Below the pieces are notes generated by a model. The model did no database searches and had not been told where the DNA came from. It saw only the letters and a list, made by a program, of their open reading frames with translations. DNA of 64,000 bases. Source: Macrostomum lignano (Eukaryota). Position numbers and translations under genes: made by a program. Below are positions 23,055 through 35,000 of this stretch, in pieces (within the stretch, counting starts at the first letter, position 1; each line of letters begins with the position of its first letter). The stretch is from the NCBI GenBank assembly GCA_002269645.1, contig NIVC01001610.1:62001-126000 (forward strand), read 5' to 3'.

Positions 23055-26000
23055 GTGAGTAGTATATGTTGCCGTTTAATTTTTTGGGTTAAAATTACCA
23101 AGGATTGGGATATTTCAAGCTTCAGTCAAGCATAATTATCAAAGTTTTAATCAACCCAAAAGGGCAAGTTCGACAGTTTGTTGAAGCAGCGCTCCGACAG
23201 CCAGATTCTCTGCTGCTCGGATGGGCCGAGGGAATTCGACAACACCCTGCCGCTGTGGACATCGTTGTGGACGGACATGACGTTGAAGAGCTTCGCCAAG
23301 GAGCTGGTGAGTGTAGAATGTACTACTACTACTACTACTACTACTACTACTACTACTACTACTACTACTACTACTACTACTACTACTACTACTACTACTA
23401 CTACTACTACTACTACTACTACTACTACTACTACTACTACTACTACTACTACTACTACTACTACTACTACTACTACTACTACTACTACTACTACTACTAC
23501 TACTACTACTACTACTACTACTACTACTACTACTACTACTACTACTACTACTACTACTACTACTACTACTACTACTACTACTACTACTACTACTACTACT
23601 ACTACTACTACTACTACTACTACTACTACTACTACTACTACTACTACTACTACTACTACTACTACTACTACTACTACTACTACTACTACTACTACTACTA
23701 CTACTACTACTACTACTACTACTACTACTACTACTACTACTACTACTACTACTACTACTACTACTACTACTACTACTACTACTACTACTACTACTACTAC
23801 TACTACTACTACTACTACTACTACTACTACTACTACTACTACTACTACTATTGATACTACTAATGCTACTACTACTACTACTACTACTACTACTATTGAT
23901 ACTACTAATGCTACTACTACTACTACTACTACTACTACTACTACTACTACTACTACTACTACTACTACTACTACTACTACTACTACTACTACTACTACTA
24001 CTACTACTACTACTACTACTACTACTACTACTACTACTACTACTACTACTACTACTACTGCTACTACTACTACTACTACTACTACTACTACTACTACTAC
24101 TACTACTACTATTAATACTACTAATACTACTACTACTACAACTACTACTACTACTACTTACTACTAATACTACTACTACTACTACTACTACTACTACTAC
24201 TACTAGCTAACCACCCTGCTCTAACCCGAACCCAGGCCAAGAAGGATTCAGCGCAATTTTTCCAACTGTCATTTCGCGGCGAGGCCTACATCACCGACCA
24301 GGGCATCCGTTGGCTGTGCGAAGCCTTTGAAAAAGAGAGAAAGGATCCGGAGAAGATTAAGGTTTGTATCCTGTTTAAAAAATACCGTCTATATATGGTG
24401 CTACTATTAGTAGAAGAGTGTACTAAAACGACACACCTTCACTGCACCAACAGAAAGTCCAGATGAACATCGACCTGCAGCACTGCCCCGCCATCACCAA
24501 GAATTCCATAGCGCACCTGTTCCGGACTTTCTCCAGCGCTTCCGTGGTCAAGACGGACATTGCCGATAAAATGGACGATGATGACTTGAAGAAGAACAAA
24601 GGTGGGTGGGCAAAATATACCCTATCTACCACTCTCTTGCCCTCCAAATCTATCTACCTCCCATTTCTACTTATCTTGTCACTGCCTTATCTACCCTATC
24701 TACTCTATCTACCGTATCTACCCTATCTATCCAATCTACCCTGTATACCCTATTTATATCGTCTACTAAGCTATCTACCCTATATGCCTTATCTATCTTA
24801 TCTACAATATCTTTCCTATCTACCTTAACAACCCCATCTGCCCAATTTACCCTATCTACCCTATCTACCCAATCTACCCTGACTACCCAATCTATCCAAT
24901 CTACCCTATCTACCCTATCTATCCTATCTACCCTATCTATCCAATCTACCCTATCTATCCTATCTACCCTATCTATCCAATCTACCCTATCTATCCTATC
25001 TATCCTATCTATCCTATCTACCCTATCTATCCAATCTACCCTAACTACCCTATCTACCCTATCTATCCTATCTACCCTATCTATCCTATCTACCCTATCT
25101 ATCCTATCTACCCTATCTATCCTATCTACCCTATCTATCCTATCTACCCTATCTACCCTATCTATCTACCCTGGCTAGGCCTTACGCAGGTGACAAAGAA
25201 GGTCAATTATTTATCCTCGCAGAGCTGGCCGAGGAGCTGGCGGTCAGCAGCCTGCTGTTCGTGTCGCTGCCGGAAGTTCAGTTCAGCGCGATGTCTGCGG
25301 TGAAGGAGGGCAAGCTGAAGGCGGCCGGCGGTCGGGGCGCGGCGGTGGACGACAAATTCATGAAGGTTGGCGACGCCCACGTGGTGGCGACCGAGCTGTG
25401 CTTGTCCGTGAGTTTCTCTTGACTTTTATATTGCTCTGAACTATGAGTGCTCAGCAGCACACACGCAAGTAAACTGTAAATTAGACAAAATGGATATATA
25501 ATCTGACGCGACGCAGACAAGGCTTGTTTAATTTGAACAATAATGCAGCGAACTGATATATTTGCTGAGAAAATATTACAACGAAGAAAAGCTAGATTCA
25601 GTTATTTAAATACGTAGTGGTATAAAACGATATTTGAGTTATTGATAAAAGTTAGATTTGAAAGTACGCTATGTGCGCATTGATGTACGCATGAGTGGGG
25701 TGGACGCTAGGCATGGTAAGCAGGGCACAAAGTGAGTCAGTTTAATATCTAGCCAGTCAATAGTCAGCGACAACCCCCCAACACGTCATAATCAATTGTT
25801 AAAATATTTCAATATCAAGCGAGATTTTGTTCATTAAACCATATCTGCAAACACTAATGACAAAAATCCAACAATAAGTACTCGCGCAAAAATGTGAAAA
25901 AATGCTGTCAATGAGCCCTCGGTTAATAGCATTGTACTGAAGATTTAATTAATAAACACTTAGCCATAAACTGTCTACGTTTCGTGGGACAAAACGATAA

Positions 26001-32000: not shown

Positions 32001-35000
32001 ACTGCGCTGCCGGCCGCCGCCGGAAAGCCCTGGACTGGCCGCTGTTCACCCACGCCCAGCTGCCAGCCGGTAGCGAGCCAGTCGCTGCCTACCGAGTCTA
32101 CCGAGGCATTGTCCGGCCGGTTGAGCGCGCCCTGCCCGCCCTGTTCGGCCTGACCAGCCGGCTCGGCCAGCTGTGCCGCTGCTCAGCCTCCGGCTTTGTT
32201 CGCAGCCTCTGGGGCGTCGAGATTGTCGTTGCTCACGTGACTAAAAGCGGCGACGAGGATGGAGCTGGCGCAGACGGCAGGAACGGAGAGCTGCACCTCA
32301 CGGCCTGGCTGCCTGTGGCCGCTGCCTCTGGCAAAATGTCGTCGGCGCAGCGGGCGTCCACCAGGCAGCTGCTGTGGTCGGCGCTGCACCTGTTCACCGA
32401 TGCGCTGGACGCCCTGCTGCTGAGACAGGGCTGCCTCGGTGTCCAGGTTCAGTCCTCTGCGGATGGCGAGAAGGAGGAGAGCGGCGAACCCGGTTAGCCT
32501 GCGTGTTTCATTTTATGGCCTCCCAAATGCTTCATCTCATCTATTGAATACCTAATTGAGTCTCTCAACTTCTCTGCCTCATCGAGTCCCTCATCTTCTG
32601 TGCCATATTGAATCCATAAGCTTCTGTGCCTGATCTGGCACCGCCTTTTCTGAACTGTACTGTCGCCTTGTTGCTGTTGTGGTTGTTGCTGTTGTTGTTG
32701 TTGCTGTTGTGGTTGTTGCTGTTGTTGTTGTTGCTGTTGTTGTTGTTGTTGTTGTTGTTGTTGCTGCTGTTGTTGCTGCTGTTGTTGCTGTTGTGGTTGT
32801 TGCTGTTGTTGTTGCTGTTGTTGTTGTTGCTGCTGTTGTTGTTGCTGTTGTTGTTGTTGTTGTTGTTGTTGTTGTTGTTGTTGTTGTTGTTGTTGTTGCT
32901 GTTGTGGTTGTTGCTGTTGTTGTTGCTGTTGTTGTTGTTGTGGTTGTTGCTGTTGTTGTTGTTGCTGTTGTGGTTGTTGCTGTTGTTGTTGTTGCTGCTG
33001 TTGTTGTTGCTGTTGTTGTTGTTGTTGTTGTTGCTGCTGCTGTTGTTGCTGTTGTGGTTGTTGCTGTTGTTGTTGCTGTTGTTGTTGTTGTTGTTGTTGT
33101 TGTTGTTGTTGTTGTTGTTGTTGTTGTTGTTGTTGTTGTTGCTGTTGTTGCTGTTGTGGTTGTTGCTGTTGTTGTTGCTGTTGTTGTTGTTGTGGTTGTT
33201 GCTGTTGTTGTTGTTGTTGTTGTGGTTGTTGCTGTTGTTGTTGTTTTTGCTGCTGTTGTTGTTGTTGCTGTTGTGTCTCATCAAAGACCTCACCCGTGCC
33301 TCATCAAGTCCCCAGCTTCACTGCTTCATTGAATCCTTTAGCTTGTTTGCTTAATTGGATCACCCAGCTTCTGTCGCATCCAATCCATAAATCTCCCAGA
33401 TTCTCTGCCTCATTGAATCCCTCAGCTTCTGTGCCTCATCCAATCCAGAAGCTTTTGTGCTTCATCAAGGACCTCACCTGGTGCCACATCAAGTCCCTCA
33501 GCTTCTCTGCCTCATTGAATCCCTCAGCTTCTGTGCCTCATCCAATCTAGAAGCTTTTGTGCTTCGATCATCAAGAACATCACCTGGTGCCACATCAAGT
33601 CCCTCAGCTTCTCTGCCTCATTGAATCCCTCAGCTTCTGTGCCTCATCCAATCTAGAAGCTTTTGTGCTTCGATCATCAAGAACATCACCTGGTGCCACA
33701 TCAAGTCCCTCAGCTTCTCTGCCTCATTGAATCCCTCAGCTTCTGTGCCTCATCCAATCTAGAAGCTTTTGTGCTTCGATCATCAAGAACATCACCTGGT
33801 GCCACATCAAGTCCCTCAGCTTCTCTGCCTCATTGAATCCCTCAGCTTCTGTGCCTCATCCAATCTAGAAGCTTTTGTGCTTCATCAAGGACCTCACCTG
33901 GTGCCACATCAAGTCCCTCAGCTTCTCTGCCTCATTGAATCCCTCAGCTTCTGTGCCTCATCCAATCTAGAAGCTTTTGTGCTTCGATCATCAAGAACAT
34001 CACCTGGTGCCACATCAAGTCCCTCAGCTTCTCTGCCTCATTGAATCCCTCAGCTTCTGTGCCTCATCCAATCTAGAAGCTTTTGTGCTTCGATCATCAA
34101 GGACCTCACCTGGTGCCACATCAAGTCCCTCAGCTTCTCTGCCTCATTGAATCCCTCAGCTTCTGTGCCTCATCCAATCCAGAAGCTTTTGTGCTTCATC
34201 AAGGACCTCACCTGGTGCCACATCAAGTCCCTCAGCTTCTCTGCCTCATTGAATCCCTCAGCTTCTGTGCCTCATCCAATCTAGAAGCTTTTGTGCTTCA
34301 TCAAGGACCTCACCTGGTGCCACATCAAGTCCCTCAGCTTCTCTGCCTCATTGAATCCCTCAGCTTCTGTGCCTCATCCAATCTAGAAGCTTTTGTGCTT
34401 CATCAAGGACCTCACCTGGTGCCACATCAAGTCCCTCAGCTTCTCTGCCTCATTGAATCCCTCAGCTTCTGTGCCTCATCCAATCTAGAAGCTTTTGTGC
34501 TTCATCAAGGACCTCGCCTGGTGCCACATCAAGTCCCTCAGCTTCTCTGCTCATTGAATCCCTCAGCTTCTGTGCCTCATCCAATCTAGAAGCTTTTGTG
34601 CTTCGATCATCAAGGACATCACCTGGTGCCACATCAAGTCCCTCAGCTTCTCTGCTCATTGAATCCCTCAGCTTCTGTGCCTCATCCAATCTAGAAGCTT
34701 TTGTGCTTCGATCATCAAGGACATCACCTGGTGCCACATCAAGTCCCTCAGCTTCTCTGCTCATTGAATCCCTCAGCTTCTGTGCCTCATCCAATCTAGA
34801 AGCTTTTGTGCTTCATCAAGGACCTCACCTGGTGCCACATCAAGTCCCTCAGCTTCTCTGCCTCATTGAATCCCTCAGCTTCTGTGCCTCATCCAATCTA
34901 GAAGCTTTTGTGCTTCATCAAGGACCTCACCTGGTGCCACATCAAGTCCCTCAGCTTCTCTGCCTCATTGAATCCCTCAGCTTCTGTGCCTCATCCAATC

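What the first reader, a model, noticed from the sequence alone, without database searches (positions are those of the whole stretch)
24236..32492. Degenerate second Roc-COR module (pseudo-GTPase) in the N-terminal half, with a large insertion
Seen: it aligns by eye to the intact module in the same gene. QLFILAELAEELAVSSLL corresponds to KLMFVGLGGVGKTSLL (P-loop lost). AYNLQYFPSQPDQVVIVVLN corresponds to YYNTHQFFLTHRAVYLLLY. VGTPLH corresponds to VGTHSD. QLVEALQWLHERGSVIFL..VTDLPWFFDLL corresponds to HVRQAVNFLNDIGSIQYF..VINPKWIVDVM. It is preceded by FBXL-type LRR-like segments (YITDQGIRWLCE, IDLQHCPAITKNSIAHL). A beta-rich insert of several hundred residues (about 26568-29780) interrupts the pseudo-Roc. 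Known: Roc-COR proteins dimerise through COR. Inference: an intramolecular active/inactive pseudo-dimer could regulate the C-terminal GTPase.
Basis: inference. Interest (0 to 1): 0.72.

Follow-up and report, generated by a model that had tools for sequence, protein, structure and literature searches.

The report
Vestigial second COR module in flatworm Roco gene
The front half of a giant Macrostomum (flatworm) LRR-Roc-COR-TIR gene holds a diverged extra copy of the COR-A domain plus the last strand and helix of a Roc GTPase, but no detectable GTPase core, so only part of the proposed second "pseudo-GTPase" module is real.

Summary
They splice GT-AG into one open 934-aa frame. Macrostomum lignano gene models show the same junctions.

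A profile of this stretch hits 24 of 120 real Roco proteins at E<=0.01 and none of 240 decoys. The match runs back into the last strand and helix of Roc (E 1e-3, z about 7.5).

The proposed P-loop, switch II-beta4 and G4 pairings give no signal and are not conserved. The COR-B position is collinear but not significant. The beta-rich "insert" is conserved but matches no family. AlphaFold models were unusable (pLDDT 34-39).

Verdict: a vestigial Roc-COR remnant, or a Roc-less COR module. A pseudo-GTPase is not demonstrated, and the intramolecular pseudo-dimer is untested. This is a new variant of a known kind, of moderate interest.

The parts
24236..24361 (+). Exon A (aa 1-42 of the 934-aa numbering): LSFRGEAYITDQGIRWLCEAF, LRR-like by eye only
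   Evidence: Open frame and GT-AG sites. 41% identity to P0128 over exons A-B. No Pfam LRR hit.
24454..24601 (+). Exon B (aa 43-91): IDLQHCPAITKNSIAHL, LRR-like by eye only
   Evidence: No Pfam hit.
25190..25407 (+). No detectable relation to Roc.
   Evidence: hhalign against the Roc sub-profile gives E 0.45 / 0.2. HMM against 120 Roco proteins: 6 real and 5 decoy hits. QLFILAELAEELAVSSLL is not conserved in P0128.
26074..26190 (+). Exon D (aa 165-203): AYNLQYFPSQPDQVVIVVLNDFDRAVGHIAETLVTYLSK. It is the best conserved block of the family, with a strand-helix pattern, but its fold is unassigned.
Evidence: 56-67% identity to the paralogues. With the broad profile the top pairing is VVIVVLNDFD against the G4 strand, at E 0.45.
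26568..26767 (+). Exon E (aa 204-269): poorly conserved, probably disordered linker
   Evidence: 24-25% identity. No secondary structure in the AlphaFold model of the paralogue (low confidence).
28899..29126 (+). Exon F (aa 270-345): first part of a conserved beta-rich domain (the 'insert')
   Evidence: Conserved W(I/V)LP..FSV motifs in P0128 and P0135. Strands in the low-confidence model. No Pfam hit.
29448..30144 (+). Exon G, first part (aa 346-578): the rest of the beta-rich domain, a low-complexity linker with VGTPLH and the conserved FRVLCHR, then helices
   Evidence: VGTPLH is not conserved in the paralogue (DEGAH in P0135), whereas FR(V/I)LC is.
30145..30420 (+). Exon G, last part (aa 579-670): the Roc C-terminal strand/helix-like stretch (about aa 569-608, ..LELFGTDQLPELRAALAATSQAA) and the first half of the COR-A-like domain, up to QLVEALQWLHER
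   Evidence: hhalign A5 against A3: aa 579-748 match Roc alpha5 plus COR-A, Prob 88%, E 3e-6. Sub-profile: Prob 96-97%, E 1e-9 to 4e-11. Roc C-terminal piece alone: score 22.6, E 1e-3, against shuffles of mean 9.8, sd 1.7 and max 14.1.
30700..30900 (+). Exon H (aa 671-737): second half of the COR-A-like domain (GSVIFLRHLSLIVTDLPWFFDLLESLPF..GVWSEATL)
   Evidence: COR-A-only piece: score 50.3, E 1e-8, shuffle max 16.1. The junctions are confirmed by P0125.
31901..31933 (+). Start of exon I (aa 738-748): the last aligned COR-A helix (PHLRRILADSG against LLKLTEAFDL)
31934..32492 (+). Rest of exon I (aa 749-934): the region in the COR-B position. It is collinear with COR-B, but not significantly similar.
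   Evidence: hhalign E 0.17-0.52, in register (ELHLTAWLP against RLSISVFGP; LLWSALHLFTDALDALL against VLFMIRDVIDGLIKETF). HMM against Roco proteins: 4 real and 2 decoy hits. 30% identity to the L001 relative.
48211..51056 (+). Intact Roc-COR module used as comparator. Exons: 48211-48591, 49440-49874, 50222-50383, 50486-50682, 50783-51271. Roc 48229-48588; COR-A 49602-50365; COR-B 50534-51056.
   Evidence: Pfam Roc 1.7e-20, COR-A 2.7e-24, COR-B 5.4e-30. 461 homologues at E<=1e-10.
52066..54717 (+). TIR domain downstream of the intact Roc-COR, split by an intron that holds a 2.2-kb (TGGTGTTGGA)n array
   Evidence: Pfam TIR_2 2.6e-19. Tandem repeat at 52178-54395.

Best explanation
The region encodes the N-terminal part of a very large, Macrostomum-restricted multidomain protein. 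Downstream on the same strand this gene continues into a conventional LRR-Roc-COR-TIR unit.

Shown: aa 579-748 of the region (window 30145-30420, 30700-30900, 31901-31933) are a diverged homologue of the last strand and helix of a Roc domain plus the whole COR-A domain.

Inferred: the following ~190 aa sit where COR-B would be. The whole stretch descends from a duplicated Roc-COR unit whose G-domain core was eroded or replaced by an unassigned alpha/beta block (exons C-D) and a conserved beta-rich domain.

No member of the family has a P-loop, DxxG or a proper NKxD motif. The module therefore cannot work as a GTP switch. It most likely acts as a nucleotide-independent scaffold or docking surface. 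A plausible but untested version: it pairs with or buttresses the active Roc-COR, or mediates oligomerisation, and so influences assembly of the C-terminal TIR signalling domain.
For: Gene model: an open frame across nine GT-AG exons. The junctions are shared with M. lignano models, and P0125 is 100% identical across G|H and H|I.

Constraint: relatives at 30-40% identity keep the frame and show blocks of high conservation.

COR-A homology:
- hhalign Prob 88-97%, E 3e-6 to 4e-11, about 156 columns.
- 40 column shuffles reach at most score 20.7 and the reversed query 19.3, against 64.5 for the real query.
- Each family member alone hits the same register: window E 3e-4, P0135 E 1.6e-6, L001 E 5e-4.
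- An HMM of the stretch finds 86/120 Roco proteins at E<=10 and 24 at E<=0.01, against 11/240 and 0/240 decoys.

Roc C-terminal trace: a separate test gives score 22.6, E 1e-3, against shuffles of mean 9.8 and max 14.1.

No nucleotide-binding motifs: no Pfam Roc, Ras or any P-loop family hit.

Context: an intact Roc-COR-TIR lies downstream, and exons 1 to M form one 1745-aa open frame.
Against: - No Pfam COR-A hit for the window sequence, even at E<=10. The single window sequence against a Roc-COR HMM gives only E 0.03-0.08.
- COR-B and the G-domain core show no signal above decoys. 'Descended from a full Roc-COR' therefore rests on about 37 aligned columns of the Roc C-terminus plus position.
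- The family alignment is very shallow (Neff about 1.4).
- The AlphaFold models are unusable (pLDDT 33.9 and 39.3), and Foldseek gives noise.
- The link between exon M and the LRR exons is ambiguous, so the two modules may lie in separate transcripts.
Confidence: 0.6

Rival explanations
1. The region is a full pseudo-GTPase Roc-COR. Exons C-D plus the segment after the beta-rich insert still fold as a G domain that has lost nucleotide binding. COR-B is retained, and the module forms an intramolecular pseudo-dimer with the active Roc-COR.
For: - The COR-A and Roc-C-terminal homology makes a Roc-COR ancestry likely.
- FR(V/I)LC, after the insert, is conserved like a strand and is predicted as a strand in the low-confidence model.
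- The COR-B alignment is collinear.
- COR-B mediates dimerisation in known Roco proteins (PMC6337361).
Against: - All G-domain pairings are at chance level (E 0.2-0.8; 6 real against 5 decoy hits).
- Excising the insert does not increase the alignment score.
- QLFILAELAEELAVSSLL and VGTPLH are not conserved.
- No structural support.
Confidence: 0.2
2. The region holds an independently acquired or shuffled COR-A-like helical and winged-helix domain. There is no Roc-COR duplication, and the flanking regions are unrelated lineage-specific domains.
For: Only COR-A is strongly detectable. COR-B and the Roc core show no signal. The neighbouring domains (beta-rich domain, Cys-rich exon J) match no Roco-associated family.
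Against: The alignment runs continuously from the Roc beta6/alpha5 region through the Roc-COR linker (the LP..LW motif) into COR-A. The Roc piece is above its shuffle null on its own. The segment after COR-A aligns collinearly with COR-B.
Confidence: 0.15
3. The profile match is a false positive. The region is an unrelated orphan sequence, or a decaying pseudogene.
For: No Pfam or PDB sequence hits. Pairwise BLASTP is not significant. The alignment is very shallow.
Against: Shuffle, reversal and decoy controls all separate cleanly. Three sequences each hit the same register independently. The open frame is kept over at least 15 exons, and the region is conserved between paralogues.
Confidence: 0.05

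Closest known systems
LRR-Roc-COR-TIR Roco proteins of lophotrochozoans and rotifers. Examples: the Aplysia 'ROCO' TLR/TIR-domain proteins (PMC9334734); the Candidula, Brachionus 'pats1', Capitella and Haliotis 'roco11' proteins found.
   Same: The C-terminal half of the gene is an ordinary member: LRR, Roc, COR-A, COR-B and TIR_2 all pass Pfam cut-offs, with 44-52% identity to these proteins. Extra accessory domains (Mbt, EF-hand, NHR, death) are known in this group (PMC9334734).
   Different: None of the retrieved homologues is reported to have a second COR-like unit. The N-terminal ~1700 aa (H3-like tail, unassigned blocks, vestigial Roc end with COR-A, Cys-rich exon, beta-rich domains) has relatives only in Macrostomum-like sequences.
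The RocCOR supradomain of LRRK2 and Chlorobium tepidum Roco (GTPases activated by dimerisation)
   Same: The COR-A-like stretch aligns over the whole N-terminal COR, including the LHxxG..(I/V)xF and P.W motifs of the winged-helix part and the preceding Roc alpha5.
   Different: There is no G1-G4 motif and no significant COR-B, the part that forms the dimer interface (PMC6337361). The module fails Pfam thresholds. A ~250-aa beta-rich domain and long low-complexity linkers lie upstream.
Pseudo-GTPase domains, such as the pG1 and pG2 domains of p190RhoGAP (from my own knowledge, not tested here)
   Same: The concept is the same: a G-domain-derived module that has lost its nucleotide-binding motifs and serves as a scaffold.
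   Different: In those cases the G-domain fold is demonstrated. Here only the last strand and helix are detectable, and the fold is not shown.

Membership tests
Roco (Roc-COR supradomain), N-terminal module | Roc G domain with P-loop GxxxxGK[ST], DxxG and [NT]KxD motifs | tested here: not met
   No Pfam Roc, Ras or P-loop hit. hhalign E 0.2-0.8. HMM against Roco proteins: 6 real and 5 decoy hits. The motifs are absent in all family members.
Roco (Roc-COR supradomain), N-terminal module | Trace of the Roc C-terminus (beta6/G5/alpha5) directly before COR-A | tested here: met
   37 columns, score 22.6, E 1e-3, against 40 shuffles of mean 9.8, sd 1.7 and max 14.1. It is continuous with the COR-A alignment. 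The support is weak but above the null.
Roco (Roc-COR supradomain), N-terminal module | COR-A domain | tested here: met
   Profile-profile Prob 96-97%, E 1e-9 to 4e-11. Shuffle and reversal controls. Single sequences hit the same register. 24/120 real against 0/240 decoys at E<=0.01. Caveat: below the Pfam COR-A threshold (no hit).
Roco (Roc-COR supradomain), N-terminal module | COR-B domain (the dimerisation part) | tested here: inconclusive
   Collinear and in register, but E 0.17-0.52. 4 real against 2 decoy hits. The low-confidence model has a helix, three strands, a long helix and a hairpin.
Roco (Roc-COR supradomain), N-terminal module | Three-dimensional fold superposable on solved Roc-COR structures | tested here: inconclusive
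   AlphaFold pLDDT 33.9 (P0135) and 39.3 (P0129). Foldseek against PDB gives only noise, TM <= 0.16. The correctly spliced window protein could not be submitted.
Roco, C-terminal module (control) | Roc, COR-A and COR-B above Pfam gathering scores | tested here: met
   Roc 73.9 bits, COR-A 86.2 bits, COR-B 104.6 bits, TIR_2 70.3 bits.
Pseudo-GTPase | G-domain fold retained while nucleotide-binding motifs are lost | tested here: inconclusive
   Loss of the motifs is shown. Retention of the fold is not shown by sequence or by model.
SPRY / concanavalin-like (the 'insert') | Match to SPRY, Neuralized or ConA-like profiles, or to their fold | tested here: not met
   No Pfam hit at E<=1 for the insert or for P0128/P0135. 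The model is beta-rich but low confidence. No Foldseek match.
Cysteine-containing (FBXL/RNI-type) LRR, exons A-B | Match to LRR profiles | tested here: not met
   No LRR family at E<=10 for the 934 aa, nor at E<=0.1 for the first 250 aa of the protein. Only a by-eye ITDxGxxxL pattern remains.

The most novel reading that the evidence does not exclude
A Roco protein carries, in one chain, a nucleotide-free vestigial Roc-COR and an active Roc-COR. These pair COR to COR as a built-in heterodimer. A dimerisation-dependent GTPase would thus become a single-chain switch that gates TIR oligomerisation.
Probability: 0.1. Interest if true: 0.75.

Novelty: new variant of a known kind. Interest (0 to 1): 0.42.

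Why it matters
Roco GTPases, including LRRK2, are thought to work through COR-mediated dimerisation. A natural protein that pairs an active Roc-COR with a dead, Roc-less COR unit would be a useful comparative case for what COR does without a nucleotide switch. It would also bear on how LRR-Roc-COR-TIR immune-type receptors of invertebrates are regulated.

As it stands, the solid result is narrower. A lineage-restricted orphan region of a flatworm gene can be assigned to COR-A only by profile-profile comparison. That improves the annotation of a region that standard pipelines leave blank.

Tried and rejected
- Pfam scan of the spliced 934 aa, of the paralogues and of the sub-regions: nothing relevant.
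- PDB sequence searches with the single sequence and with a profile: nothing. The only curiosity is a weak TRIM34 B-box match (E 2.8) to the Cys-rich exon.
- BLASTP between the two halves: not significant.
I therefore used M. lignano models, relatives and single exons instead.
- Both further word-index searches (three used in all): no new distant relatives of this region. The exhaustive representative search found only 8 proteins.
- AlphaFold on the paralogue P0135 and the relative P0129: pLDDT 34 and 39. Foldseek on both models gave noise.
- Excising the insert to rejoin a putative split G domain: no score gain.
- A metazoan-only Roc-COR profile: COR-A is still significant, Roc and COR-B still are not.
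- A first set of sub-profiles was mis-registered and was discarded.
- Resolving the exon M to LRR-exon junction: several frame-compatible paths exist and none is decisive.
- The UniProt names 'COR domain-containing protein' for P0001, P0002 and P0125 are only a hint. Sister fragments carry unrelated names, and the current Pfam COR-A model does not hit them.

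
Full report
WHAT IS THERE

The window is eukaryotic, and its introns are packed with mini- and microsatellites. I joined nine segments by hand through canonical GT-AG sites. The segments are 24236-24361, 24454-24601, 25190-25407, 26074-26190, 26568-26767, 28899-29126, 29448-30420, 30700-30900 and 31901-32492. They give one stop-free frame of 934 aa.

The nearest database proteins are fragmentary Macrostomum lignano (flatworm) gene models. 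They use the same junctions D|E, E|F, F|G, G|H and H|I. One of them, P0125, is 100% identical to my model over aa 618-848, across two junctions. The window is therefore M. lignano or something nearly identical to it.

Upstream, two further exons start at ATG 22725. Downstream, exons J to M extend the frame. Exons 1 to M read as one open 1745-aa frame.

THE COMPARATOR

Seven exons between 48211 and 55008 give a 908-aa product. Its Pfam matches are Roc (7-126), COR-A (182-320), COR-B (343-483) and TIR_2 (702-811), all above their cut-offs. LRR exons lie at 46.2-47.5 kb. Its relatives are LRR-Roc-COR(-TIR) proteins of snails, rotifers, annelids and many bacteria. This architecture has already been described in Aplysia (PMC9334734).

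SINGLE-SEQUENCE TESTS OF THE FINDING

- The 934 aa have no relevant Pfam hit, even at E<=10.
- They have no PDB sequence hit.
- BLASTP against the intact module is not significant.
- An HMM of 37 Roc-COR proteins, run without filters, picks one spot only: QLVEALQWLHERGSVIFL against LHdLGeilyF, at E 0.03-0.08.

By eye and by single sequence, therefore, nothing exceeds chance.

RELATIVES

An exhaustive HMMER search of 1.84 billion representative proteins found only eight proteins. They comprise:
- M. lignano fragments of this locus;
- a divergent M. lignano paralogue (P0130/P0135, about 32% identity, covering exons D-H);
- a transcript-like contig from an SRA run (P0128, 39% identity, covering exon 1 to exon F);
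- a contig from an ENA assembly (P0129 = L001, 31% identity, covering exon H, exon I and the Cys-rich exon).

The family is thus lineage-restricted, but it is under constraint. The frame is kept, and conservation comes in blocks. Exon D is 56-67% identical, the COR-A-like stretch 30-43%, and the linkers about 24%.

PROFILE TESTS

With the four-sequence alignment (A5), hhalign against the Roc-COR alignment (A3) gives Prob 88% and E 3e-6. It aligns aa 579-748 to the last Roc helix plus all of COR-A.

With cleanly cut sub-profiles, aa 500-740 against intact aa 140-325 gives Prob 96-97%, E 1e-9 to 4e-11, over 156 columns.

Controls:
- 40 column shuffles reach at most score 20.7 and the reversed query 19.3. 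The real query scores 64.5.
- Each family member alone hits the same register: window E 3e-4, P0135 E 1.6e-6, L001 E 5e-4.
- An HMM of the stretch finds 86 of 120 real Roco proteins at E<=10 and 24 at E<=0.01. Of 240 shuffled or reversed decoys it finds 11 and 0.
- A metazoan-only profile still gives E 5e-7.

Splitting the match gives two separate results:
- COR-A alone scores 50.3 (E 1e-8).
- The Roc C-terminal piece scores 22.6 (E 1e-3), against shuffles of mean 9.8, sd 1.7 and max 14.1. The pairing is QAYLERRIGDDLELFGTDQLPELRAALAATSQAA with QARYPQIYNFHQVSSHTGAGISELRKELVKVA.

WHAT IS NOT SUPPORTED

- Exons C-E against Roc give E 0.2-0.8, and 6 real against 5 decoy hits.
- The best local pairing changes with the profile. 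Another gives VVIVVLNDFD against the G4 strand. HMMER offers KFMKVGDAHVVATEL against the P-loop. These cannot all be true, and all are at chance level.
- Removing the insert does not raise the score.
- QLFILAELAEELAVSSLL and VGTPLH are not conserved in the paralogues.
- The COR-B position aligns collinearly and in a sensible register, but at E 0.17-0.5 and with no decoy separation.
- The beta-rich 'insert' (exon F plus the start of exon G) is conserved, but it matches no Pfam family.
- The span 26568-29780 contains two minisatellite introns.
- Exons A-B give no LRR hit.

STRUCTURE

I therefore folded the paralogue P0135 and the relative P0129, using the available alignments. Mean pLDDT was 33.9 and 39.3. 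Foldseek against PDB returned noise.

ONE GENE OR TWO

All parts lie on the + strand, and no stop-bounded end is visible. Exons 1 to M are one frame. The path from exon M (ending at 41647) to the LRR exon near 44961-45611 is ambiguous, because several frame-compatible acceptors exist. A single transcript is likely but not shown.

INTERPRETATION

The well-supported statement is this: the region contains a diverged COR-A domain preceded by the last strand and helix of a Roc domain.

The most economical history is a duplicated Roc-COR unit whose GTPase core has been lost or overwritten. Probability about 0.6 for this, including a degenerate COR-B.

The module cannot be a nucleotide switch, because no P-loop, DxxG or NKxD motif is present in any member. 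The likely function is a scaffold or docking role.

But COR-B is exactly the part I could not confirm, so I give that idea about 0.1.

COMPARISON AND NOVELTY

The C-terminal half is an ordinary member of the LRR-Roc-COR-TIR group. I found no report of a second, Roc-less COR unit in a Roco protein in the reviews I read, and none among the retrieved homologues. My literature coverage is limited, however. I rate it a new variant of a known kind, of moderate interest. The headline 'pseudo-GTPase' is not demonstrated.

Noticed in passing
window 22725-22766 (+): The predicted protein starts MARTKQTARKAAPP. After the initiator Met, its first nine residues equal the histone H3 tail (ARTKQTARK), followed by an ARKxAP-like context. 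The relative P0128 starts differently (MRKSIGPL...), so the mimic may be specific to this copy. ATG 22725 is the first ATG after an in-frame stop, and exon 1 joins exon 2 in frame.
   Followed up: partly
window 30414-30606 and 31125-31801 (+): Two neighbouring introns (G-H and H-I) each hold a related 22-bp minisatellite carrying AGTCAGGAGCTG. The first array begins exactly at the 5' splice site of exon G, so the donor-like GTGAGTCAGGAGCTG is repeated about 9 times. There are 37 copies in the window against 0.4 expected.
   Followed up: partly
window 23321-24205; 26845-28820; 33397-35100; 36501-39673; 42723-44732; 52178-54395: Almost every intron of this gene carries its own long tandem array: 885 bp of (TAC)n, a 2-kb array of a 21-bp unit, a 102-bp unit, a 27/379-bp unit, a 35-bp unit, and 2.2 kb of (TGGTGTTGGA)n that splits the TIR domain. 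Several of these arrays stay open in some reading frames and mimic low-complexity ORFs.
   Followed up: no
window 35167-35522 (+), 37263-37470 (+), 39960-41137 (+): Downstream of the COR-like region lies a Cys-rich exon (CVLCGNC...CLCEP...CATCGVCADC...H.C) that is conserved in the L001 relative. Its only hit is a weak one to the TRIM34 B-box (E 2.8). After it come exons with YLWQDAGLLAYS and PAGGFFACVGMHSPGEIVQLVD, also conserved in L001. These look SPRY/NHR-like by eye but give no Pfam hit.
   Followed up: partly
window about 5000-15000 (-): A TRP-type cation channel gene lies on the opposite strand upstream. ORF pieces match Pfam ankyrin repeats and the end of Ion_trans (..[13 protein letters not shown]..).
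   Followed up: partly
L001 (ENA ERZ27264358, contig k141_1561466) 100-2533: A 2.9-kb contig from an environmental assembly encodes a 31%-identical relative of exons H-I, the Cys-rich exon and the following beta-rich exons, with short introns. The organism is unknown, so the family reaches beyond M. lignano.
   Followed up: partly
proteins P0001, P0002, P0125 (M. lignano UniRef entries covering 30.1-32.5 kb of the window): UniProt names these three fragments 'COR domain-containing protein', although the current Pfam COR-A model does not hit P0001 or P0002 (P0125 was not scanned). Sister fragments in which the COR-A-like motif is broken by frameshifts carry unrelated names (calpain, SHR-BD, helicase, SWIB). 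This hints that an earlier COR model may have matched here.
   Followed up: no
window 41648-44960 (+): The junction between exon M and the LRR-encoding exons cannot be fixed from sequence. A unique 500-bp island (42210-42722), flanked by two tandem arrays, is open in two frames and ends at a good GTGAGT donor (42707). Several acceptors are phase-compatible.
   Followed up: partly
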